A stretch of 63,249 nt of DNA, the filler included, from Octopus bimaculoides (Eukaryota): assembly GCF_001194135.2 (NCBI RefSeq). It is 5 parts of 5 records of this genome, joined end to end, with 100 filler letters (N's around TTAATTAATTAA, not from the genome) between each part and the next. Parts side by side here need not be neighbours in the genome. Positions count along the whole stretch, not along the records: positions 48,502 to 63,249 come from NC_068985.1; 4 more parts are not named here. The stretch is one strand, 5' to 3'. Below the pieces are notes generated by a model. That model had not been told where the DNA came from. It ran no database searches and was given only the letters and a program-made list of their open reading frames with translations. Of this stretch, positions 48,502 to 63,249 are shown piece after piece. Made by a program: the position numbers and the translations under genes. The number at the start of each line of letters is the position of its first letter. The first letter of the stretch is position 1.

Positions 48502-49010
48502 CGTACGACAATCGCCGACCTTCGATGCGAAAGACATCCCTTGGCAAATATATGTAACTTTCTCCAGTGAAATTATTCACTGATATCGAAAAAGTGAAAA
48601 CAAGCAATGTTAAATCTCTGAACGAGGTATTAACAGTAACTGCACGATAAAGTGAAGTATATTAGCCCCTCCTGGGGCTAAAAGCAACAGTAACATCCAC
48701 CCCTCGGGGTCAGCCACATTTAAGTGGCAAATATACTTCACTTTATCGTGCAGTTACTGTTAATACCTCGTTCAGAGATTTAACATTGCTTGTTTTCACT
48801 TTTTCGATATCAGTGAATAATTTCACTGGAGAAAGTTACATATATTTGCCAAGGGATGTCTTTCGCATCGAAGGTCGGCGATTGTCGTACGCTGAAGAAG
48901 GGGAATAACCCTGAAACTCGGGTACGTACGTATCGTACATCAAGATGGGAAAGATAACTTCCCTTGGCAAATACAGTCAGGGCACAGATGTGTGTCGATA
49001 GCCACACATT
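48502..49010 (+). mobile_element. Structured hammerhead-containing repeat (PLE pLTR / retrozyme-like) with a 162-bp inverted 5' arm
   Basis: 48502-48663 is the exact reverse complement of 48730-48891. 48669-48790 is homologous to 26546-26666. It contains the hammerhead above. Confidence 0.7.
48879..48935 (+). ncRNA. Type I (minimal, probably dimer-forming) hammerhead ribozyme motif
   Basis: Stem I CGAU-ugu-CGUACG / CGUACG-u-AUCG; core CUGAAGA (48892-98); stem II AGGG/CCCU with loop GAAUAA; GAAA (48913-16); stem III ACUCGGGU, self-complementary with G-U pairs; GUA cleavage triplet (48922-24). All conserved core nucleotides are present. Confidence 0.8.
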
Positions 49011-49122
49011 TTATCTATAAAGCTCAATTTAATTTTGATTTTTTATAAGTTGATTTTAATTGAGTTTTTACCTGTAATTTTGGATTTTGTCCCTAATATA
49101 TATATATATATATAATATGTAT

Positions 49123-51375
49123 TGTTGTGTCTGGAGAGAGTCATTCTCTTTTAGTGCCTTTATAATTAAAAACACTCACCGGAAAAATTTCCACTCATTT
49201 ATTTATTTATTTTTCTAAATTTTTCGTTGCATCTTGCAACCTTTTCAGTAGCTGTTGACTCTGTCCATTATTCAAGCTGCGTTCCTTTTTTTTGTGCGCA
49301 TTTGCGTGGGTCAGTGTGTCTGTATGTATGGATGTGCATCTCCGTCTGTGTGGACGTGTGTCTCCATATATGTCCTTGTGTGAAGTGTAGTATGTGTGTG
49401 TATGGTCATGTGTTTCAGTTTTCATTTGCGCATGTAAGTGTACGTGTGCTTGTCTGTTCATATTACCTATGTACCTATCCGTCTGTATATTTGTCTGTTT
49501 ACTTTCATATCCATTTGCCTACATACATGTGCATATAGATATATATATATATACACACACACATACATTCATCTTCATAACAGCCCACTAACTATTCTAT
49601 CTGTATATAAATATAAACTGTGGGTATGGGTATGATTATCTACTACGTATATTTCCTATTTAGTACTGGAGATGTTTCATTTATGAGGACGTACTCCTGT
49701 ATTTGTCTGAGTGTTGGGTCCTTTGGGTGCTTGGATAAAATTCGGATGTCAAGTTGACCCAAGTTGCCTCCATGTTGATCTATGGCATGTTGGTAGAGCA
49801 TGGAGGACTGTTTTTTGTCGTCATATTGTCTCAGATGTTCATTTAGTTTTTTCGCAATGCTCCGAGATGTCTCCCCTGTGTACGTCATGTTCATGTCTTT
49901 ACAAGCACCTTCTATGAATCTTATGCTGTAAACTACATTTCTAGTTCTACAGTTAGTGCCTGGGCTAATCCTACATACACTGCAGTTATCATTGGTGCAT
50001 ATGATATTCTCAAATCTATATTCTCACATAGTTGTGATCCGATGGAGTTCCCTGGCTTTTCAGCAATCTTAATGTTGAGTTTGGTCTCCATCAGAGCTTT
50101 CCAAAATCTACGGGCTAGTTCTCTATGGGCTGTGGCCTCTACAAACATCACTCCTTGATATTTGTCGGTTTTATACCACATGTTCACCCTGTTTGCTTTG
50201 TCACAATATCTTTGTATCCTATTCTAGTCTTTGCTCCTATATCTAGAGCAGGTACCACTGGTTTCATTACATATAATGTTATCTAACTTCTTTCTAGCAC
50301 CCCTATATACTCGAACCCTATCTTTCTGATCATATCCCGAGAATTGCATGTGGTGCATGAAGTTCTGAACATGTTTCCTCGTTTCATAGGGTTTGCATAT
50401 AAGGAACACGTTATTAATTATCCTAACTAAGTCTGCTATCAGTATGTTAATTTTCATGTTGTGTGACAAAGCTGAGTTCTTGTGAACAACATATTTCGAA
50501 GCTATGGGTTTCATGTAATAGGAATGGAGGAGCTGCACTCTGTTCACAGTCTCTAACCAAAGTTCAGTATCAAGGACGAGGAGTCTATTGTTAGGGTGCA
50601 TAGTGGGGTAATCTATAGTTACCTTGATACTTTGGTGGAAGGAATTAGCTACTTGCTGGATGCTCTTCATTATGTTCTTCTCAGTTTCTACATTACCGTC
50701 ACTAGAGTTGGTTTTAACTAGGATATTAACGTCATCTACATATCTACTATAAAGTAGAAGAGTTGTGGACTGTTCTGCTATGGATTGCTTAAGTTTTCTG
50801 TCCCACCAGATCATGAAGAGGTTGGCCACATCTCCAGCTATACCGACACCAATGGCTGCACCTCGAACCTGCATGTATAGTTTCTTGTTAAACTTTACTA
50901 TGTGATTCTTGAAGGGCTTCTTACGCTAGCCCTTATTGCATGTGCAATCATTCCTTTCACCTGATTATTATTCTCAGGGTCCTGGGTGGGTACGGTCCAG
51001 CCATTCCACCGCTCTGTAGTGCTTTTCTTCGCTGCTGAAGTGATGGTGGGTGGTCTTCCCCTCTGTGACCCGGTGGGGCAGAATCTACTGAAGTCATGTT
51101 CGTCTAAACAGATACTGTCGTAGCTTAGTCTAAGGATGAGGCCCAGTTCCCTCGTGTTGACCTTACGGAACTCTACTTCACTCTCACAGATTATCTCAAT
51201 GCGTTTCTCCACAGCAAAATGTTTGTCTGTAGATGGGTAGTGTTAAATCACATTCATGTTACCTACTACACAATCTGCAAGTACTGATTTTACTGAGATC
51301 TTCCGTGCTCACACAGAACTCTAGGAACATTTCTATGAGAGGTCGTAAAACCTGTGAGAAGAAGTAGGACAGTCT
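49123..51375 (-). mobile_element. Penelope-like retroelement copy 1: 5'-truncated, frameshifted RT + GIY-YIG endonuclease + 3' terminal region
   Basis: RT motifs VVGNMNV..YPS, QVRGAAIG and LYSRYVDD (50224-50874 ORF). The GIY-YIG part reads MTYTGETSRSIAKKLNEHLRQ (49643-49894). The 3' non-coding region is homologous to copy 2. Confidence 0.92.
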
Positions 51376-52049
51376 ATAATGTGTGATACATACATATATA
51401 TATGTATGTATCACACATGCTCGAGCTCCAGCGCGCGTTCACGCACATACACACACGCACTCATAGACACACGTACACACACATGTACACAAATATACAC
51501 GAGCATACACAGAAACAAAACACAGCTTTTAAACTACTTATGGTAATAACTTTGTTTACAACTCAACGGAGATATATATTTTACCATTCTCTTTTCACAT
51601 TTCACGACCTTAAATTATATTCAAGAAATAATTTTCCACTTGTCAAGATGAATGGGCGACTACTTTCAAAGGCGTGAAACATTTCAGGGGAGATAACTTA
51701 ACACAACCTACTAATCCTGTCAGTACGAAATCGTTTTTATTACAACACATAATAGTAAGTAGGCGAACTTGACAGAATCGTTAGCTTTGCGGCATTTTGT
51801 CCGCCTTCACGTTCTGAGTTCAAATTCCTCTGAGGTCGACTTTACCTTTAATCCTTTCTGGGTCGATAAAATAAGTACCAGTCGAGCACTTTCGGAGTCG
51901 ATAAAATAAGTACCAGTTATGCACTGGGGTCGATGTAATCCACTGGCTCCCTCTCCCAAAATTCAGCCTGTGTGCCTATAGTAGAAAGGAATGTGAGAGA
52001 AGATAAGATAAGATAAGAGTAAAGCTGTATTTGCTTCTGATGAAAGATT

Positions 52050-52055
52050 TTTATT
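52050..52055 (-). promoter_or_regulatory. Candidate polyadenylation signal AATAAA of the GST gene
   Basis: Plus-strand tttatt reads AATAAA on the minus strand, about 25 nt after the stop codon. Confidence 0.6.
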
Positions 52056-52079
52056 TCAAATACTTTTACATATCATCGT

Positions 52080-52223
52080 TTAGAACCTTGATTTTGGACG
52101 TCTCTCCAAATATGCGGCAATGGATGGTCGTTTAGCAACATTTTCTCGAAGATTAGCCAAATTTTGGTAGTTTTTCAGCAAATTAGGATCTTCCTGGACC
52201 GGGGATTCCAATACGATGAAACA
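52080..52223 (-). CDS. Terminal coding exon of the same GST / S-crystallin-family gene (5' end lies in the N gap)
   Basis: Translates CFIVLESPVQEDPNLLKNYQNLANLRENVAKRPSIAAYLERRPKSRF*, matching the GST-sigma C-terminus pattern (C..LE.P....P.LL..YP.L..LR..VA..P.IAAYL..RP...F*). Stop TAA at 52082-52080. Confidence 0.88.
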   Translation of the reverse strand, partial: CFIVLESPVQEDPNLLKNYQNLANLRENVAKRPSIAAYLERRPKSRF

Positions 52224-52683
52224 NNNNNNNNNNNNNNNNNNNNNNNNNNNNNNNNNNNNNNNNNNNNNNNNNNNNNNNNNNNNNNNNNNNNNNNNNNNNN
52301 NNNNNNNNNNNNNNNNNNNNNNNNNNNNNNNNNNNNNNNNNNNNNNNNNNNNNNNNNNNNNNNNNNNNNNNNNNNNNNNNNNNNNNNNNNNNNNNNNNNN
52401 NNNNNNNNNNNNNNNNNNNNNNNNNNNNNNNNNNNNNNNNNNNNNNNNNNNNNNNNNNNNNNNNNNNNNNNNNNNNNNNNNNNNNNNNNNNNNNNNNNNN
52501 NNNNNNNNNNNNNNNNNNNNNNNNNNNNNNNNNNNNNNNNNNNNNNNNNNNNNNNNNNNNNNNNNNNNNNNNNNNNNNNNNNNNNNNNNNNNNNNNNNNN
52601 NNNNNNNNNNNNNNNNNNNNNNNNNNNNNNNNNNNNNNNNNNNNNNNNNNNNNNNNNNNNNNNNNNNNNNNNNNNNNNNNNNN

Positions 52684-52740
52684 TACACGACTGCGCCTAC
52701 ACGACTGCGCCTACACGACTGCGCCTACACGACTGCGCCT
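52684..52740. repeat. 14-bp minisatellite (TACACGACTGCGCC)x4, continuing into the gap
   Basis: Read directly from the sequence. Confidence 0.95.
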
Positions 52741-52875
52741 TACAAAGAAATAAAAAAAGAACAACCAGCTCAAAACTACCAGAAATACCACTACCCTAAC
52801 CAACATCAAGACCCTTCTTTTAACTAATACCCTAATACAAATACTAGTTTCTTTGTAAGCCTAGTACTTATTCTA

Positions 52876-55212
52876 CAGGTTGTGCAGTGGGTAGTATGGA
52901 TGTGATTTCACTCTACCTATCTATAGACAGATTTTGCGGTGGAGAAATGCATTCAGGTAATCTGTGAGAGTGAGGTGGAATTCTGTAAGTTCAACACGAG
53001 GGAACTGGGCCTCCTCCTCAGACTATGCTATGACAGTAACTATTTAGAAGACCATGACCTCAGTAGATTCTGCCCCACCAGGTCACAGAGGGGAAGACCA
53101 CCCACCATCACTTCAACAGTGAAGAAAATCACCAGAGAGCGGTGGAGTGGCTGTACCGCACCCACCCAAACCCTGAGAACAACAATCAGGTGAAAGAAAT
53201 GATTGCACATGCAATAAGGGCCAGTGTAAAAATAACCTTGAAAAACCACAGTAAAGTTTAACAAAAAATTATACATGCAGGTTCAAGGTGCAGCCATCGG
53301 TGCAGCTGGAGATGTGGCTGGCTTCTTCATGACTTGCTGGGCCAGAAAACTTAAACAAATGTTAGCAGAACAATCCACAACTCTTCTACTCTACAGTAGA
53401 TATGTAGATGACATTAATACCTTAGTTAGGACCAACTTTAGTGACGATAATGTAGAAACTGAGAAGAACGTAATGGAGAGCATCCAGCAAATAGCTAACT
53501 CCATCCACCAAAGTATCAAGGTAACTATAGATTACTCCACTAAGCACCCCAACAATAGACTCCCTGTACTTGATACTGAACTTTGGTTAGAGACTGTGAG
53601 CAATAGAGTGCAGCCCCTCCACTTCTATTACATGAAACCATTAACTTCAAAATATGTTGTTCACAAGAACTCAGCTTTGTCACACAACATGAAAATTAAC
53701 ATACTGATAGTAGAATAATGAACAATGTGTCCCCACTATGGGAATCCTATGAAACGAGAAAACATACAGAACTTCATGCACCGCATGCAGTTCTCTGCAT
53801 TTGATCAGAAAGATAGGGTTCGAGTATACAGGGGTGCTAGAAAGAAATTAGACAACATTATACGTAATGATACCAGTGCTACCTACCCTAGATATAGAAA
53901 CAAAGAATGAAATAGGATACAAAGAACTTGTGACAAAGCGAACACGTGGTATAAAACCGACAAATATCAAGGAGTGATGTTTGTAGAGGCCACAGCCCAT
54001 GGAGAACTAGCCCGTAGATTTAGAAAAGCTCTGAAGGAGACCAAACTCAACATAAAGATTGCTGAAAAGCCAGGGAACTCCGTCAGATCACAACTATGTA
54101 GGACGTACCCCTTTGAGAATACCATATGCACCAATGATAACTGCATGGTATGTAGGATTATCCCTGGCATTAACTGTAGAACTCGCTCGAAATATAGTTT
54201 ACCGCATAAGATGCATAGAAGGGGCTTGTAAAGACATGAACATGGCGTACATAAGTGAGACATCTAGGAGCATTGCGGAACGACTAAATGAACATCTGAG
54301 ACAATATGACGACAAAAACCAATCCTCCATACTCTACCAACATACCAAAACCACCATGGAAGCAACTTGGGTCAACTTGACATCCACATCTTATCCAAGC
54401 ACCCAAAAGACCCAACACTCAGACAAATACAGGAGCACATCCTTATAAATGAAACTTCCCCAGTACTAAATAGGAAATATACATAGTAGATATCATACCC
54501 CCATACTCACGGTTTACACAGGTAGAGTAGAATAGTTAGTGAGCTGTTATGTAGATCAATGTATGTGTTTGTGGGGGTGTATATGTGTGTGTGCACATGT
54601 ATGTAAGCATATAGATATGAAAATAAACAGATCAATATACAGACGGATAGGTACATAGGTAATATGAACAGACAAGCACACATACGCAAATGGAGACTGA
54701 AACACATGACCATATATACACACACACTTTACTTCACACAAGGACACATATGGAGACACGTGTCCACACATATGGAAATGCACACCCATACATACAAACA
54801 TGGTACATAGTTGCAAATCACACGCACGCACAGACATGCACACACAAGGGAACAGAGGTACATACATATACAAGCACACGCTCACACACACACATACAAA
54901 ATACACAAACACGGACATACAAGCACATGAATATGCAGAATACATACATACAGATGCACACATGTATACATTCATACATGCATGCATAGGCACACACACA
55001 TACAAACACACACACACTGACCCACACACATGCGCACAAACAAACAAAAAGGAACGCAGTGTAAATAACGGACAGAGACAAGACTATTGAAAAGGTTGCA
55101 AGACGCAACGATAATTTTAGGAAAATAAAAATAGGAAATAAGTGGAAATTTTACCGGTGAATGTGTTAAATTATAAGGCACAAAAATAAAATGACTCTCC
55201 CCAGACACAACA
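52876..55212 (+). mobile_element. Penelope-like retroelement copy 2: 5'-truncated, frameshifted RT + GIY-YIG + 3' terminal region; lies in the GST intron, antisense to the gene
   Basis: Motifs VGSMDVISLY, QVQGAAIG, LYSRYVDD and NIVYRIRC...AYISETSRSIAERLNEH. It is the reverse complement of copy 1 out to CCAGACACAACA (55212). Confidence 0.92.
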
Positions 55213-56408
55213 GAATATGCTTCAACACACGAACTCACATAAAGAATCTTGCAAACCAAATCCAAAAACGAAATATATATATATATATATATATATATAT
55301 CGTCATAAATATACAGGGATTAGCATTGAGTTGCTTCTCCAACATACTGAAAATTTAGAAATAGCAGTCAAAGAACTACTGATTCTAGACTACAAATTTT
55401 TCTCTAAACGGATGGCGATATTTATGGCACACATAGAACAAAAAAGCGGAGGGAAAAGCGTAAACAAAACAAGTCTTTAGTTAATTGGGTACGAATCGTT
55501 TCATGGTTAAGCGAATGAAAATTTCACTATTCCAATCTTCAGTCCAAATATTCTGATAAATTTGAAAGTGTCTCTAAAAAAATTCACGGTAATTTTTGGC
55601 CATGCGACACCATATCCAAGAAAGTTAGGGGTTGTGAATCCAACCCACTAAGGAATAATATCTATCCAATATACTGCTGGAAGAATACCCCNNNNNNNNN
55701 NNNNNNNNNNNNNNNNNNNNNNNNNNNNNNNNNNNNNNNNNNNNNNNNNNNNNNNNNNNNNNNNNNNNNNNNNNNNNNNNNNNNNNNNNNNNNNNNNNNN
55801 NNNNNNNNNNNNNNNNNNNNNNNNNNNNNNNNNNNNNNNNNNNAAAAATAGGAAATAAGTGGAAATTTTACCGGTGAATGTGTTAAATTATAAGGCACAA
55901 AAATAAAATGACTCTCCCCAGACACAACAGAATATGCTTCAACACACGAACTCACATAAAGAATCTTGCAAACCAAATCCAAAAACGAAATATATATATA
56001 TATATATATATATATATCGTCATAAATATACAGGGATTAGCATTGAGTTGCTTCTCCAACATACTGAAAATTTAGAAATAGCAGTCAAAGAACTACTGAT
56101 TCTAAACTACAATTTTTTCTTTAAACGGATGGCGATATTTATGGCACACATAGAACAAAAAAGCGGAGGGAAAAGCGTAAACAAAACAAGTCTTTAGTTA
56201 ATTGGGTACGAATCGTTTCATGGTTAAGCGAATGAAAATTTCACTATTCCAATCTTCAGTCCAAATATTCTGATAAATTTGAAAGTGTCTCTAAAAAAAT
56301 TCACGGTAATTTTTGGCCATGCGACACCATATCCAAGAAAGTTAGGGGTTGTGAATCCAACCCACTAAGGAATAATATCTATCCAATATACTGCTGGAAG
56401 AATACCCC
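55124..56408. repeat. ~565-bp near-identical tandem duplication across an N gap (55124-55691 vs 55844-56408), probable assembly or haplotype artefact
   Basis: The copies differ at only a few bases and flank the gap at 55692-55843. Confidence 0.75.
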
Positions 56409-57437
56409 ATTATTATTACATTAGTGTTTTCCCTTTGTATTACCAAGTGCAATAAATGGGTGCGGGTAAAAGGATATTTTACCCTTAATTTATATAGCAA
56501 TAAGAAAATGGAGGGGAATAGGTGGTATTCATCAACTTGCAGACATGGAATTGTGTCAATTTACCTGTTTATTTGTTAACTAAGAGGACAATAATAACAA
56601 TATACAAACGTCGCATGCATACATACATACATACATACATACATACAAACACACACACACATACATATATATAATATATGCATATATATATGTATATGTT
56701 TATAAATATATATATATATGTGTGTGTGTGTATATGTAGTTATATATATATATATATGGGCGTGTGTGTATGCATGTGTGTGTGTGTGTGTGTGTGTAAA
56801 AGTGAGTTAGAGAACAAGAGAAGGAGAAAGAGCGATACAAAGAGCGAGAAAGGGAGAGTTTGGGAGAGAGAGAGGGAGAGAGAGAAATGAACTGAGTAGT
56901 GACGGCGAGCTTGAACATCAACGATGTGATTGAGAGAAAATGCCACAGGTGAGCGTGTTTTACTGAACAGAAATACAGTAAGGTCTCATCTATGTGATAT
57001 AATGCCTGAAATATACCTGCTGCTTTCAGCTGTAAGCTTTAAAGATTAGGTTAACTCTAATATTCATTGTTTACACGGTTCAAAAATGTTAATATGCGCA
57101 TGAGACTTATTGAAGTTATCTCCTATTACTTCCTGTGTTTAAATCTTAAACATTCATAGGTGGGATTCTCTACGAATTATGTGGATAATTTTAGTTGATC
57201 GAAGTCTTTGAGCTCAAAATGTTAAATCGGTCGTTGGAAAAAGTCGTCGCTCAGATGTGTGTGAGGAACAACTTTTACCAACCACCGTTTTTTCTAAATG
57301 TCCTGATGAAGGAGTCTTCACCCCAAAATATAGAAATACAAGGTAAAACTGCATCTTTGTTTTGTTTTATTTTCCTTCTGTAATTTACTTTGTGCCTTCT
57401 CGTATTATTCCGGCCTTACACAACAATCTTCTTTAAA

Positions 57438-57468
<31 letters not shown>

Positions 57469-57670
57469 AGAGAGCAGTGCATGCCATCAAAGTGACACTG
57501 GGATAAAATATACGAAGCCCATTATACCCATCATGACTACCCTTCTGATAAGGGTACACCAGGCACATGCATCACAACCATATGTGTGTGACATTGTGAT
57601 CTCATATCAAGATAAACAGCGCATGACCTCGCATGACCTCGCATGACCTATGTATGTATGTATGTATGAA

Positions 57671-57721
<51 letters not shown>

Positions 57722-58173
57722 ATATGTATGTATGTCTGTTTATTCTAGTATTATGATAAAGAGTAACATATTTATTTAATTAACGCTTTAATTACTGCTT
57801 TGCTGATAATGCATTTTCCGTGCATTTTCCCACGGGTACGAATTAGTTTTAAATATTCTAAACTGAGTATGCATCCCAGATAACCACCATTTCTCTGCAG
57901 TGAGAGGTCACAGCTCCAGTACTATGGGCATGTGATTAGATTCTTCAAGTCGAATAAACCGGCAGGAGACCTAAGCGAGATGAATAATATCCGTAGTCTC
58001 AGTTGGTCACGTTTGGGAATCCCACCGGAAAGTGTAATGATAGCTGCTTCTGCTAGAACCTTGTGAAGGAGTTGCATGACGACTCTACTCCGACGAGCGA
58101 CCTCTCTTCACGCATTAGGAATAGTAGGTGGAGAAGTTGGTTGGCTAATGGATATTTTAACCATCAAACTTAC

Positions 58174-58272
58174 GGAATTCCCCACTATGTACAGCTGGCC
58201 AGGTTCCAGCTTGCTTTCCACATATTCAAGAACTCTTTCACAAACTTCATTGTATCTTTCTGTCACTTTCTT
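58174..58272 (-). CDS. Internal (penultimate) exon of a sigma-class glutathione S-transferase / S-crystallin-family gene
   Basis: 99-nt phase-0 exon translating KKVTERYNEVCERVLEYVESKLEPGQLYIVGNS. It has a poly-pyrimidine tract plus AG acceptor at 58274-58273 and a GTAAGT donor at 58173-58168. It resembles the segment of cephalopod sigma GST that ends in ..FFVGNS. It is absent from the ORF track. Confidence 0.85.
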
Positions 58273-59117
58273 CTAAAAAAAAAAAAAGAAAAAAAATTAA
58301 AAACATAATAGAAATTAAACTGAATATTATACATGCAGGGTAAAGTAGTGAACTGACAGAATGGTTAACTCGTCGGAAAAAATGCTTAGCGGCATTTCGT
58401 CCGTCTCTATAATCCTTTTTTTTTTACTAGTTTTAGTACGTTAATTGCGTCACTGCAATTATATACGGGNNNNNNNNNNNNNNNNNNNNNNNNNNNNNNN
58501 NNNNNNNNNNNNNNNNNNNNNNNNNNNNNNNNNNNNNNNNNNNNNNNNNNNNNNNNNNNNNNNNNNNNNNNNNNNNNNNNNNNNNNNNNNNNNNNNNNNN
58601 NNNNNNNNNNNNNNNNNNNNNNNNNNNNNNNNNNNNNNNNNNNNNNNNNNNNNNNNNNNNNNNNNNNNNNNNNNNNNNNNNNNNNNNNNNNNNNNNNNNN
58701 NNNNNNNNNNNNNNNNNNNNNNNNNNNNNNNNNNNNNNNNNNNNNNNNNNNNNNNNNNNNNNNNNNNNNNNNNNNNNNNNNNNNNNNNNNNNNNNNNNNN
58801 NNNNNNNNNNNNNNNNNNNNNNNNNNNNNNNNNNNNNNNNNNNNNNNNNNNNNNNNNNNNNNNNNNNNNNNNNNNNNNNNNNNNNNNNNNNNNNNNNNNN
58901 NNNNNNNNNNNNNNNNNNNNNNNNNNNNNNNNNNNNNNNNNNNNNNNNNNNNNNNNNNNNNNNNNNNNNNNNNNNNNNNNNNNNNNNNNNNNNNNNNNNN
59001 NNNNNNNNNNNNNNNNNNNNNNNNNNNNNNNNNNNNNNTCTCCTCTCGGTGAAGTATAGCCTGATCTAAAGATCTTTGTAAGTTGCCGAATTTCACAGAT
59101 AATGACATAATTACCTC

Positions 59118-59400
59118 GTGCTACGGATGAAAGCAAAGCAACAGTTAAGGAGTGGCATATTTTACCACGACAGACACGTACACAGCATCGAATACCACGA
59201 TGTGAGTGAAAGCTGCTCTCACTGTATTGTCCGGTGTCTGGTAATCCCTTCGATACCGACATCAAACCAAAAAAAGAATCCTGACCACAGAGTGTGGGTA
59301 ATTATGTCAAAGGTCACTGGCAATGTGCATTCAGCTGATTGCAACTGTTAAAGCAAGTCACTGAGCATGCGTACATGTCATACGGGAGAGTTTCAATCAG
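59118..59400 (+). pseudogene. Fragment of a SWIM zinc-finger protein, probably transposon-derived
   Basis: Translates YHDVSESCSHCIVRCLVIPS...PDHRVWVIMSKVTGNVHSADCNC; after a 1-nt frameshift KASH*ACVHV completes a CxC...CxH motif. Confidence 0.55.
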
Positions 59401-59761
59401 GGGTGGATAACAACCTTATAGGAACCCCCTATATTTCGATGACATATCCGATACTAATTTATTCAAACGTGGTATGGTGCAATAAACATGATTATTTAAT
59501 AAAGGAAATTATACTTTATCAAAAAAAGTTCTTGAGAATACTGGAAGGAACACATCGCTCAGTACATATCAGTTCGCTTTTTCAAAGAATAAAAATAAAA
59601 ATACAAGATTTCAAATATCTTCCAAATCATTCATTACGAAAAAGCTATCATTGTTTGCTCATAAACGCTAACTTGATATGTATGCAATGACCAACTTCGA
59701 AATGAATAGTAAGGAAAATAGAAATCAGAACAAAATATTCATTGATAGGATTAAACTAAAT

Positions 59762-59996
59762 CAGTGGTTCTGAACCAGTTTTTGTTTATGGACCCCTTGG
59801 ATTCATATCTTACTTTACTGGACTTCCATAGCTTTTCAAAGTATAATAAACAAATTCCTACTGCATTATTATAATTAGATATTATTAGGAACTGTATAAA
59901 AATTATAATATCTAGTATATTGTAGAACTACAAGCAATTTACTGCACATAAATATTAACACCAAAATTTCATATGGATTCCGGTTGAGAACCACTG
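59762..59996. mobile_element. Non-autonomous hAT (Charlie-like) MITE
   Basis: 15-bp TIRs CAGTGGTTCTGAACC / GGTTGAGAACCACTG with one mismatch. No clean 8-bp TSD. Confidence 0.75.
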
Positions 59997-60774
59997 GTCT
60001 TCTAAATAGATCGAAGAAAATGTTAGATTTTGTTGGATGTTCTGCGTACAATGGTTTGCCTGATGATATCAAAGCTACACAAAATAGAATACTTTTTAGC
60101 GAAAGCTAGGGAAGAATATTGATAATGAGATGGAGAATGCAGTGTAGGGTCAAGGTTTGTTGATCCCGCCTTGAAGTTGAATATTTTCTTTGTCCACGTG
60201 CCATTCTTTCACTAGGAATAGTAACGTACATTGTTCTATTTTCTTATTGATTAGAATAAACTTTATTACTTCTACTCAGGTGTCGTCAATAAGGTAACAA
60301 TTAAGTTATAATGTTCACAGAATATATTATGGTTATAGTTGTACACATGATTGTCTCTGGCCGATAGGCTGAACACCAGTAGGCGTCTCTAGCCTAACTA
60401 AAATAACAATAACTTATGTGCACCAGTAGACGTCATAGCCTGTTTAGAAGTGGTTGTAAATACTGAAGTGAGGTAGATATTGGACATAACGGAAGATGGT
60501 CCATGGTAGATGGCTGATGGGGTGGGTAGGGCAGGTGCATCACCGCCGACAGAAGGTGCCTATTGCAGCGCTCCTTACTACCCAAACAGAAAAGGATTCT
60601 GTTGAGAAATAAATTAAAAGTTGCAGAGACACGTCATATATTTTTTAGTTATATCTTTGTATTATATTAGGATCATAGCTTATGGTGTTTTGACTGGGAC
60701 TCTCTTAGTTGTAAATAAATATCCAGCATGGTTCTAGTAGGAATTAAAACTGGTGCTTTGAAGAGAGAGAGATG

Positions 60775-60832
<58 letters not shown>

Positions 60833-62199
60833 GTTATTATTATTATTGTTGTTGTTGTTGTTGTTGTTGTTGTTATTATTATTGTCGTTGTTATATCTGA
60901 ATAATTTCTTTTTCTGTACACCAGTTTTGTTTTATTTGATTTTTAATAAACCCAAGATGATGGTGGTACGGGGTCGAAAATTTTTTGGGGGGAAAATCAT
61001 GTAAGGGTGTCTGCACAAAGTAGTCTTTGCAGTCACGCTTCTAAGGGATCTAGCTTTTTTCATTCGCAAAATATGCATTTTTTAAAAGGAAGTAAAAAAT
61101 CTGAAAATCGGCTATAATAATGTAGTTTTTCAGTCTCATTGCTATGAAGGTGTGATGTTGTGGACAAAAAAATGGAGGAAAAATTACAGAGGTTTAAAAA
61201 TCTGAAAAACTCTGTATTTTCAGCTAATAGTGTGACAGAAATTTTGTGCGTTTAGCGGAGCGGTGTCAACTTTAAGGTTGTGCCCTGTGAAATTTATAGT
61301 TTAGCATCTGTGATAGGAACTGTTCATTGTAGGTTTCTAAATAAACAAAAATACATAATGAGATCAGCATGCATCATCTTACTGATACATAATGAGATCA
61401 GCATGCATCATCTTGTGAACCACAACACACTTTAAGTCCAAATAACATCAGATTCCTTAATTTACGAGATAAAATAATTGGTTGTACGAAATCAAAATTC
61501 AGAGTTGCATCGATACACCAAAATTGAAAGCAATCTGAGCAAAATTAAAGGTGGCTCATTTTGTAAATGAAAAAGACTAGATCTGTTCTAAGTAATAATG
61601 TGTGAACTGTGGAAGGGTTAGTATAATGAATATATTCAAAAGTAAGATTCCTACCTTCAAACTTTCCGTACAGGTTTCTAGTTGAATAAGAGCGTTCAAA
61701 ATATGCATTACACATTCTACAACTTCATCAATAACGTATTCTTCATAAACGGTTTTACCGTAGAAACCTGGTAATAGGCAAAGAAATATATGAAATAAAA
61801 ATTATTTCAAAACGTAAAAAACAGAAGTACAGGGCGGTGAGTTGAAAATTACTCTAAATCAAGTCAAATGTCTTAACTTAAAGAAATAGAAGTCACATAT
61901 CACTCAAACCACACTCCATTGTCTTAGAAAAGTATGAATTACAGCCAGCTGTTATTCTAAAGCAGATATGATCTGGTGTTGTGTGCCGTCATTTCTACTA
62001 TTGTTTTGGGCACCTAAATAGTTGCGAGCAGATATAAACATCCGCTCACCCCTCATCCTTTATATTTGATCCAAAGGATCATTATGAATGTGACAGCTGG
62101 AGGTAAACAGAGCTGCACTAGCACATGGTTCAAATACAAAACGGTTGTCCGGCCACGGAATTGGACCGACGACTTTACCAAACCACTAGGCCACGTAGA

Positions 62200-62500
62200 T
62201 CCAGCCTGAGAAAAGGACGCATTAGAAATTTACTTTGGTTGGGCCATGTACACAGGATGGACAACAACAGGCTCCCCAGACAAATCCTTTACACCCAACT
62301 GTGTAAGGGGAAAAGAGACCAGGGAAGAACTAGACTAAGATTCAAAGATACTGTAAAAAGGAACATGAAGTGGAAAGGAATTGATCATAATAAATGGCAA
62401 ACTCAAGCAAAAACCCGACCAGTATGGAGAAAGCCAACCAAGTCATGCCAAAACTATCAACAGGCATAATCGTGACGACTGACTGCAGATGATAGATAAT
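62200..62500 (+). mobile_element. 5'-truncated RTE-clade LINE 3' end
   Basis: Translates LLWLGHVHRMDNNRLPRQILYTQLCKGKRDQGRTRLRFKDTVKRNMK...W, a typical RTE ORF C-terminus. Confidence 0.88.
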
Positions 62501-63204
62501 GAGTTTTAGAGTCGAGAGTTTGCTCTTACACTTCCTCATTCCCTTCCCTTTATCTCCTTCAGCCATGTATCTCCTCTATAGCAAGATATCTGCGCTTGTC
62601 TCTCTATCATACTTTAACCTTTTGGTGCCTGGCATAAAGCCACCCACCTCCGCTTTGCCTCTCGAATACTCCTCTCTTAGCTTTTTCCTTATTCCCTGTT
62701 TTTATTTACTTATTTATTTATTTATTTTTATCTTACATGTTACACGGCAACCTAACTAGTAGCGGTAGCACGAAAAAGGCACCTAATTGTTTCCCTATGC
62801 ACAGGAAAAAGACTGAATGGTTACGGTTCGACTGCTTTTGATCACAGATCTCTTCAATCAAAGCTAACAATAAGCTTAAACAACAGCAACGTATACGACG
62901 AGAAAAGTAACAGCTACAATTTGTGTTAGAATGAGTGCCGACACATTTAATACTTGCCATATAACCTTCCTAAATAACGAATGATCGCCATGCTCTGACT
63001 CAAAACTGTAGTGCCGTCAATAATGAGTACGGGAATTGCTTTAGAAGGTATACCTATAGATAAACCACATTTTCAAGTTAATTAGAAATATAGAGGAAAC
63101 AAACAAAGGCGGTTTTATCGTTCGTCCTATATACATACACAGACATCCTAAAAGTAAATAGACACCTCTTCTTTTATATATATGTATATGTGTGTGCATA
63201 TTTG

Positions 63205-63249
<45 letters not shown>

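What the first reader, a model, noticed from the sequence alone, without database searches (positions are those of the whole stretch)
49123..55212. Two PLE copies form a ~2.2-kb-arm inverted repeat bracketing the GST last exon
Seen: copy 1 (-) and copy 2 (+) diverge from a 1.5-kb spacer holding the terminal exon and poly(A) signal, and the arms are roughly 85% identical by eye. One arm is in the last intron; the other starts about 700 nt past the poly(A) signal. Established: coleoid cephalopods have extensive ADAR editing, and long flanking inverted repeats form dsRNA that can alter splicing. Inference: read-through pre-mRNA could loop out the last exon, affecting editing, splicing or 3'-end choice. 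The arms could also promote inversion or deletion of the exon.
Basis: partly seen in the sequence, partly recalled or inferred. Interest (0 to 1): 0.7.

Follow-up and report, generated by a model that had tools for sequence, protein, structure and literature searches.

The report
Two dead retrotransposon copies flank GST exon
Two decayed copies of one Penelope-like retrotransposon sit in opposite orientation on either side of the last exon of an octopus glutathione S-transferase gene; the repeat is real, but it looks like ordinary transposon clutter, the related Octopus vulgaris lacks it, and nothing here shows that it does anything.

Summary
Window 49123-51277 and 52876-55212 form an inverted repeat, 86-87% identical over about 2.1 kb. 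Both arms are 5'-truncated, frameshifted Penelope-like elements (reverse transcriptase followed by a C-terminal GIY-YIG endonuclease), placed head to head.

The spacer holds the terminal exon of a sigma-class GST gene on the minus strand (52223-52080), with a conserved AATAAA at 52055-52050.

The gap 52224-52683 is a sound join. The gapless Octopus vulgaris orthologue is collinear across it (508 bp there against 460 N here). The gap hides the rest of a 14-bp minisatellite, some intron, the splice acceptor and about 21 nt of the exon.

The two copies are independent insertions:
- Their 5' truncation points differ.
- No host flank is shared between them.
- The intronic copy is an outgroup to the two orthologous downstream copies (K2P 0.148-0.155 against 0.093).
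- The intronic copy is absent from O. vulgaris, which carries a LINE and a SINE in that stretch instead.

The arms could pair as RNA only in transcripts that run 0.8-2.9 kb past the conserved poly(A) signal. The longest perfect match between the arms is 61 bp, so recombination between them is unlikely. This is an ordinary instance of a known kind, and no function is shown.

The parts
49123..51384 (-). Downstream (left) PLE copy. It is 5'-truncated and decayed. The inverted-repeat arm is 49123-51277. Landmarks: RT motif C 'YSRYVDDVN' at 50751-50725; GIY-YIG endonuclease about 50014-49646; low-complexity CA-rich 3' region 49123-49645; (TA)n at 49096-49122 abuts the 3' end.
   Evidence: tblastn with P0002, an 803-aa O. 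vulgaris PLE ORF, covers residues 280-801 in four pieces with three frame changes and in-frame stops. Weak Pfam RVT_1 and GIY-YIG hits appear in the expected order. The endonuclease alignment keeps the conserved C..C..C, R..Y, Y.GET.RS, H..H, RQ..E and N positions. An orthologous copy is present in O. vulgaris at L001 24132-26571.
52854..55212 (+). Intronic (right) PLE copy, antisense to the GST gene, 5'-truncated and more decayed than the left copy. The inverted-repeat arm is 52876-55212. Landmarks: RT motif A 'GSMDVISLY' at 52890-52916; motif C at 53392-53418; GIY-YIG about 54194-54483.
   Evidence: tblastn with P0002 starts at residue 316-322 and runs through many stops and frameshifts. There is no orthologous copy in O. 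vulgaris. The only hit is a paralogous one to the downstream copy at 81.6%.
51278..52875 (.). Spacer between the arms. It is host DNA, orthologous to O. vulgaris throughout except for the unread gap.
52080..52223 (-). Terminal exon of a sigma-class GST gene, cut at its 5' end by the gap. The stop codon TAA is at 52082-52080.
   Evidence: GST_C_3 27.7 bits. 81% identical to residues 91-137 of O. vulgaris 'glutathione S-transferase 1-like' P0001. The best solved relatives are squid sigma GST 1gsq and octopus S-crystallin 5b7c.
52050..52055 (-). AATAAA poly(A) signal, 25-30 nt after the stop codon.
   Evidence: Found in the pattern scan and identical, with its context, in O. vulgaris.
52224..52683 (.). 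Assembly gap of 460 N. It corresponds to 508 bp in O. vulgaris: the rest of the minisatellite, a SINE-like repeat, the end of the intron, the acceptor and 21 nt of the exon.
52684..52744 (.). 14-bp minisatellite (GCGCAGTCGTGTAG)n running into the gap. O. vulgaris has 16.8 copies at the same place. This is the likely cause of the assembly break.
51784..52000 (-). SINE-like repeat in the 3' flank of the gene, orthologous in O. vulgaris at 94.9%.
   Evidence: A related copy sits at L001 22490-22560.
58174..58272 (-). Penultimate GST exon. Its GT donor is conserved. The intron from here to the gap is the 'last intron' that holds the right arm.
61724..61767 (-). GST exon, 44 nt.
62958..63053 (-). 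GST exon with the 'SQSMAIIRYL' motif of the N-terminal domain. Its apparent donor is GC.

Best explanation
These are two separate insertions of the same family of canonical (C-terminal GIY-YIG) Penelope-like retrotransposon. Both were 5'-truncated on arrival and both are now dead. They landed in opposite orientation on either side of the last exon of a sigma-class GST gene in an Octopus genome. That genome is about 9% diverged from O. vulgaris, which fits O. bimaculoides; the species assignment is an inference.

The downstream copy, which is sense to the gene, predates the split from O. vulgaris. The intronic copy, antisense to the gene, is not present in O. vulgaris.

The inverted repeat is a passive by-product of transposon accumulation in a genome that is about two-thirds repeats. 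It is not a selected device.

Shown: structure, identity, orientation, the gene model, soundness of the gap join, non-conservation of the arrangement, and in-silico pairing. Inferred: that the repeat has no function. Its only plausible molecular effect is formation of a long imperfect duplex, with ADAR hyper-editing, in the minority of transcripts that run more than 0.8 kb past the conserved poly(A) signal.
For: - The arms are real and are PLEs.
- The 5' truncation points differ: P0002 residue 280 at 51384 against residue about 316-322 at 52854-52876.
- Homology stops at the element ends, so no host flank is shared.
- The spacer is host DNA orthologous to O. vulgaris and contains the exon.
- Three-way distances are 0.093 between the left copy and its O. 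vulgaris orthologue, 0.148 between right and left, and 0.155 between the right copy and that O. vulgaris orthologue. The right copy is therefore an outgroup and not a recent local duplicate.
- O. vulgaris has no inverted partner within 33 kb. Between the shared anchors it carries a LINE with 373- and 549-aa ORFs plus a SINE.
- Both copies end next to (TA)n or (CA)n microsatellites. This matches the microsatellite insertion bias and frequent 5' truncation reported for PLEs (PMC8557442).
- 66% of the O. vulgaris genome is repeats, with an old PLE expansion wave (PMC13282606).
- Nearby inverted repeat copies are the generic source of hyper-edited dsRNA, and O. bimaculoides is exceptionally rich in them (PMC5625713).
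Against: - No RNA data could be consulted, so a real effect on editing or 3'-end choice cannot be excluded.
- The direction of the difference between species is unresolved. Between the two anchors (52851 with L001 22610, and 56685 with L001 16898) the species share nothing, so the intronic copy could be either a lineage-specific gain or an ancestral copy lost in O. vulgaris. A K2P of 0.148 between the arms would even fit two insertions from one master before the species split.
- Only one other species was available for comparison.
Confidence: 0.82

Rival explanations
1. One reading: the inverted repeat is functional. Read-through pre-mRNA folds the two arms into a roughly 2-kb duplex that loops out the terminal exon and changes editing, splicing or 3'-end choice of the GST transcript.
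For: Arm segments co-fold at -241 to -474 kcal/mol, against -63 to -145 for shuffled partners, with 90-97% of positions paired between the strands. Octopus shows massive hyper-editing tied to inverted repeats (PMC5625713). AATAAA motifs at 49198-49211, at the 3' end of the sense-oriented downstream copy, could serve a distal 3' end.
Against: - The arrangement is absent from O. vulgaris.
- The conserved AATAAA lies 25-30 nt after the stop codon, so the downstream arm is beyond the normal 3' end.
- A terminal exon lacks a donor, so looping by back-splicing is impossible (established knowledge).
- The substitutions between the copies show no A>G excess.
- There is no expression evidence of any kind.
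Confidence: 0.08
2. Both arms come from a single PLE insertion event. PLEs are known to integrate as complex units in which an inverted 5'-truncated copy sits next to the main copy.
For: This architecture is documented (PMC8557442). It was also seen here in O. vulgaris at the P0002 locus: L002 1-3992 against 9319-5329, inverted and 99.9% identical, with a spacer made of partial PLE copies. The distance between the arms (0.148) exceeds the orthologue distance (0.093), so a common origin before the species split is not excluded by the clock.
Against: In the known architecture the copies are adjacent or separated only by PLE sequence. Here, about 1.47 kb of host DNA lies between the ends of the two elements, including an exon, its 3' flank with an orthologous SINE, and an intronic minisatellite. 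O. vulgaris keeps the downstream copy and the whole spacer but has no trace of the intronic copy.
Confidence: 0.03
3. A local inverted segmental duplication copied the downstream PLE into the intron.
For: Same family, with arms of similar length.
Against: The right copy is about equally distant from both orthologous left copies (0.148 and 0.155, against 0.093 between them), so it split off before the species did. Homology ends at the element termini with no duplicated host flank, and the right copy starts at a different element position.
Confidence: 0.03
4. Assembly artefact: the right arm is mis-scaffolded across the gap, or was joined to this intron by a chimeric short-read contig.
For: This is a gapped assembly. 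One neighbouring gap (55692-55843) is flanked by a 565-bp 99.5% duplicate, which shows imperfect merging. PLE inverted structures are known to trouble short-read assemblies (PMC8557442).
Against: The contig that carries the right arm begins with 168 bp orthologous to the O. vulgaris last intron, at the expected place and in the expected orientation (52684-52851 with L001 22777-22610). Its other end overlaps the contig that carries the penultimate exon. At 87% identity the arms are too different to be collapsed or swapped by an assembler.
Confidence: 0.04

Closest known systems
Inverted pairs of transposon copies in or near one transcription unit (for example inverted Alu pairs in primates), the generic substrate of ADAR hyper-editing
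   Same: Two copies of one retroelement family lie in opposite orientation within a few kb and can form a long imperfect duplex if co-transcribed. Octopus is reported to be especially rich in such loci (PMC5625713).
   Different: The arms are about 2.2 kb of PLE rather than about 300-nt SINEs. One arm lies beyond the gene's conserved poly(A) signal, so co-transcription is not assured. No editing data were available.
Canonical complex PLE insertions: partial tandems (pLTRs) with an adjacent inverted 5'-truncated copy (Evgen'ev and Arkhipova; Craig et al. 2021, PMC8557442)
   Same: Head-to-head 5'-truncated PLE copies with microsatellite-associated ends.
   Different: The copies are separated by about 1.47 kb of orthologous host DNA that includes an exon. 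They are 13% diverged, and one is missing in the sister species. The true complex architecture seen at O. vulgaris L002 has 99.9% identical arms and a PLE-only spacer.
Exons flanked by intronic inverted repeats that promote back-splicing (circRNA biogenesis)
   Same: Complementary repeats bracket an exon.
   Different: The bracketed exon is terminal and has no downstream splice donor. One repeat is outside the transcription unit proper. The mechanism cannot operate as such.

Membership tests
Penelope-like element, canonical EN+ type (RT followed by C-terminal GIY-YIG) | Reverse transcriptase domain with motif C YxDD and PLE-type homologues | tested here: met
   'YSRYVDDVN' at 50751-50725 and 'YSRYVDDIN' at 53392-53418. 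RVT_1 is weak (E=0.013, below cut-off). The homologue search gives 32 hits down to E=1.8e-170, the best being an O. vulgaris 803-aa 'reverse transcriptase domain-containing' protein.
Penelope-like element, canonical EN+ type (RT followed by C-terminal GIY-YIG) | GIY-YIG endonuclease C-terminal to the RT, with a Cys/His zinc-finger-like motif | tested here: met
   Pfam GIY-YIG E=4.4e-4 (left copy) and 1.8e-3 (right copy), both just below cut-off. An alignment with 14 homologues keeps C..C..C, R..Y, Y.GET.RS, H..H, RQ..E and N. The left copy has lost one conserved Cys and the ER pair.
Penelope-like element, canonical EN+ type (RT followed by C-terminal GIY-YIG) | Frequent 5' truncation and insertion next to microsatellites | tested here: met
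   The copies start at P0002 residues 280 and about 316-322 of 803. (TA)n and (CA)n runs flank the ends. The expectation comes from PMC8557442.
Penelope-like element, canonical EN+ type (RT followed by C-terminal GIY-YIG) | Pseudo-LTRs from partial tandem insertion | tested here: not met
   No direct repeat of PLE sequence flanks either copy. The only one, 55844-55929, belongs to the 565-bp duplicate at the gap. This is expected for 5'-truncated solo copies, so it is not disqualifying.
Penelope-like element, canonical EN+ type (RT followed by C-terminal GIY-YIG) | Hammerhead ribozyme motif in the terminal repeat | tested here: not met
   No Rfam hammerhead at E<=1 in the piece. No CUGANGA...GAAA core inside either arm. 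None either in the intact O. vulgaris relative L002 at E<=0.1. Minimal PLE hammerheads may escape these models.
Sigma-class glutathione S-transferase gene (terminal exon) | GST C-terminal domain, with orthology to an annotated GST | tested here: met
   GST_C_3 27.7 bits against a cut-off of 21.6. All four exons are collinear with O. vulgaris 'glutathione S-transferase 1-like isoform X1'. The top solved relatives are squid sigma GST 1gsq (1.2e-22) and octopus S-crystallin 5b7c. Whether the product is an enzyme or a lens crystallin was not tested.
ADAR-edited inverted-repeat dsRNA locus | Both arms present in one RNA molecule, with clustered A-to-G mismatches | not testable with these tools
   No RNA-seq was available. 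Only the pairing potential was computed.

The most novel reading that the evidence does not exclude
In this species, but not in O. vulgaris, the intronic antisense PLE pairs with the downstream sense PLE in read-through GST pre-mRNA. The resulting roughly 2-kb duplex is hyper-edited and shifts 3'-end processing of the gene, for example toward the AATAAA motifs at 49198-49211 at the end of the downstream copy. That would be a lineage-specific, transposon-made change in the regulation of a GST or crystallin-family gene.
Probability: 0.05. Interest if true: 0.4.

Novelty: new member of a known kind. Interest (0 to 1): 0.15.

Why it matters
It matters little in itself. Inverted transposon pairs near genes are common in repeat-rich genomes, and they are already known to be the main source of hyper-edited double-stranded RNA, in octopus included.

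The useful results are practical:
- The assembly gap inside the finding is a sound join.
- The gap removes the acceptor and about 7 codons of the GST terminal exon, which matters to anyone building a gene model here.
- A neighbouring gap is flanked by an uncollapsed 565-bp duplicate.
- The locus offers a clean between-species contrast, with and without the inverted partner, that could serve as a natural experiment if octopus RNA-seq is examined.

Tried and rejected
- Rfam scans of the piece and of the intact relative L002 found no hammerhead ribozyme. They returned only sub-threshold miRNA-model hits on TA/CA microsatellites, which I dismissed as low-complexity noise.
- A hammerhead core pattern search found four hits, none inside an arm.
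- I looked for an empty site or target-site duplication for the intronic copy by aligning its flanks to O. vulgaris. The alignment breaks at 52851 and resumes at 56685, with unrelated sequence in both species. Gain versus loss could not be polarised.
- I looked for an A>G bias between the copies as a footprint of editing before retrotransposition. There is none.
- The first GST homologue search returned a single protein, so no third species could be brought in.
- Translating whole arms in one frame for Pfam failed because of the many stop codons. ORF pieces were used instead.
- I did not try to assign the element to a named PLE clade (Penelope/Poseidon, Neptune or Nematis), because no reference sequences were at hand.


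Full report
**Observation**

A self-comparison of the piece 48502-63249 finds one long inverted repeat. Window 49317-51277 pairs with 54800-52876 at 85.7% over 1975 columns, and the pairing continues as 49123-49336 against 55212-54997 at 82.7%. Ungapped blocks are 85-93% complementary. A MAFFT alignment gives 86.7% identity and K2P 0.148 over 2092 shared columns.

**What the arms are**

- Both arms carry decayed coding sequence in the order reverse transcriptase, then GIY-YIG endonuclease. Pfam gives weak RVT_1 and GIY-YIG hits in that order.
- A composite translation finds 32 homologues. The best is an 803-aa Octopus vulgaris protein, P0002, at E=1.8e-170.
- An alignment of the endonuclease region with 14 homologues keeps the conserved Cys cluster, R..Y, Y.GET.RS, H..H, RQ..E and N positions.
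- RT motif C (YVDD) lies at 50751-50725 in the left copy and at 53392-53418 in the right copy.

This is the domain order of canonical EN+ Penelope-like elements, as described in PMC8557442. The left copy reads on the minus strand and the right copy on the plus strand, so their 5' ends face each other. Both are dead. The left copy needs three frame changes and has in-frame stops, and the right copy has more. No hammerhead ribozyme was found in the arms or in an intact relative, and there are no pseudo-LTRs. Neither absence is surprising for 5'-truncated solo copies.

**The gene**

The GST gene lies on the minus strand. Its exons are at 63053-62958, 61767-61724, 58272-58174 and 52223-52080, and they are collinear with O. 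vulgaris 'glutathione S-transferase 1-like isoform X1', P0001. The last exon scores 27.7 bits on GST_C_3 against a cut-off of 21.6. The closest solved relatives are squid sigma-class GST 1gsq and octopus S-crystallin 5b7c. An AATAAA sits at 52055-52050, 25-30 nt after the TAA stop, and is conserved with its context in O. vulgaris. The right copy is therefore antisense in the last intron. The left copy is sense and starts 666 nt past the poly(A) signal, with the arm boundary at 773 nt.

**The gap**

The O. vulgaris locus (L001, chromosome OX597818.1, gapless) is collinear across the gap. Window 49103-52223 aligns to L001 26571-23286 at 89%, and 52684-52851 aligns to L001 22777-22610 at 91%. O. 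vulgaris has 508 bp where the window has 460 N.

On the high-coordinate side the contig ends in a 14-bp minisatellite, which has 16.8 copies in O. vulgaris. That explains the assembly break. In O. vulgaris the acceptor is at L001 23263/23264, and the first 21 nt of the exon (LSLADIA) precede the point where the window sequence resumes. The gap therefore hides the acceptor and 7 codons. The sequence on its far side is intron, so there is no frame to test across it.

The far end of the right arm is anchored too. Sequence 55127-55691 is repeated at 55844-56408 at 99.5% on either side of the gap 55692-55843. This looks like an unmerged contig overlap, and it ties the arm to the contig that holds the penultimate exon. 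Mis-scaffolding is thus unlikely.

**Origin of the arrangement**

Five results point to two independent insertions.
1. The left copy starts at P0002 residue 280 (window 51384; its orthologue starts at L001 24132). The right copy starts at residue 316-322 (52854-52876).
2. Homology stops at the element termini, and no host flank is shared.
3. The spacer is host DNA orthologous to O. vulgaris.
4. The distances are 0.093 between the left copy and its O. vulgaris orthologue, 0.148 between right and left, and 0.155 between the right copy and that orthologue. The right copy is therefore an outgroup to both and not a recent local duplicate.
5. O. vulgaris has the downstream copy but no inverted partner within 33 kb.

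Between the shared anchors (52851 with L001 22610, and 56685 with L001 16898) the two species share nothing. O. vulgaris has a SINE at the junction and a LINE with 373- and 549-aa ORFs in that stretch. I could not decide whether the intronic copy was gained in this lineage or lost in O. vulgaris.

The orthologue distance of 0.093 fits the 13-33 My split quoted for O. vulgaris and O. bimaculoides (PMC13282606). The species assignment itself is an inference.

**The single-event rival**

PLEs are known to insert as complex units with an adjacent inverted 5'-truncated copy (PMC8557442). I found such a unit at the P0002 locus in O. vulgaris: L002 1-3992 against 9319-5329, inverted and 99.9% identical, with a spacer made only of partial PLE copies. 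The window's arrangement differs in the ways that matter. About 1.47 kb of host DNA, including an exon, lies between the copies, and one copy is missing in the sister species.

**Function**

- If both arms were in one RNA they would pair strongly. Segments co-fold at -241 to -474 kcal/mol, against -63 to -145 for shuffled partners.
- Inverted repeat copies are the generic hyper-editing substrate, and O. bimaculoides is unusually rich in them (PMC5625713).
- Co-transcription, however, requires read-through of 0.8-2.9 kb beyond a conserved poly(A) signal.
- A terminal exon has no donor, so looping by back-splicing cannot apply.
- The arrangement is not conserved.
- The substitution spectrum shows no A>G excess.
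- The longest perfect match between the arms is 61 bp. From my own knowledge, this is well short of the identity normally needed for efficient ectopic recombination.

**Verdict**

The inverted repeat is real and correctly described. It was made by two independent insertions of dead Penelope-like elements around a GST terminal exon. It is an ordinary instance of a known kind, with no evidence of function. The gap inside the finding is a sound join.

Noticed in passing
window 55127-55691 and 55844-56408 (gap 55692-55843): A 565-bp direct duplicate, 99.5% identical, lies on either side of a 152-N gap. It is most likely an unmerged contig overlap, perhaps from two haplotypes. If so, the gap and one of the two copies (717 bp in all) are artefacts, and so is the apparent third PLE 3'-end fragment at 55844-55929.
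   Followed up: partly
window 48502-48891: A 390-nt near-perfect palindrome: arms 48502-48670 and 48723-48891 are 99% complementary with a 52-nt loop. It begins at the very first base of the piece, so it may be longer. It has no match in the O. vulgaris locus. It could be a foldback element or an artefact at a scaffold end.
   Followed up: partly
window 52684-52744; L001 22723-22957: A 14-bp minisatellite (GCGCAGTCGTGTAG)n in the last GST intron is conserved in position between the two species. O. vulgaris has 16.8 copies. In the window it is cut by the gap after about 4.4 copies.
   Followed up: yes
L002 1-9926 (O. vulgaris OX597831.1, 50364320-50378602 reversed): A young PLE complex of a related family. 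Two nearly full-length copies with intact ORFs of about 800 aa lie head to head (3992 nt, 99.9% identical), with partial copies between them. This is the textbook inverted/tandem PLE insertion architecture. Rfam detects no hammerhead in it.
   Followed up: partly
L001 18997-21746 (O. vulgaris, last GST intron): A LINE-type retrotransposon on the minus strand with long open frames of 373 aa and 549 aa (the latter carries RT motifs). It is absent from the window and sits in a (TA)n-rich stretch.
   Followed up: no
window 62958 (donor of exon 63053-62958): The exon appears to end in TATATG followed by GCAAGT, which would be a GC-AG intron. The reading frame into the next exon requires this junction.
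   Followed up: no
window 51784-52000; L001 23508-23724: A SINE-like repeat directly after the GST 3' end is 94.9% identical between the species, noticeably more than the 89-91% of surrounding non-coding DNA. It may lie within a conserved 3' UTR or downstream element.
   Followed up: no
window 63053-62958 and P0001: The O. vulgaris model P0001 is only 137 aa. It lacks the usual sigma-GST N-terminus with the catalytic Tyr and about 25 residues in the middle. Upstream exons would lie beyond the end of the piece. The gene may be a truncated or divergent GST/S-crystallin family member.
   Followed up: no
window 60776-60892: A short tandem duplication with a period of 36 nt, 87.7% identical, in a GST intron.
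   Followed up: no
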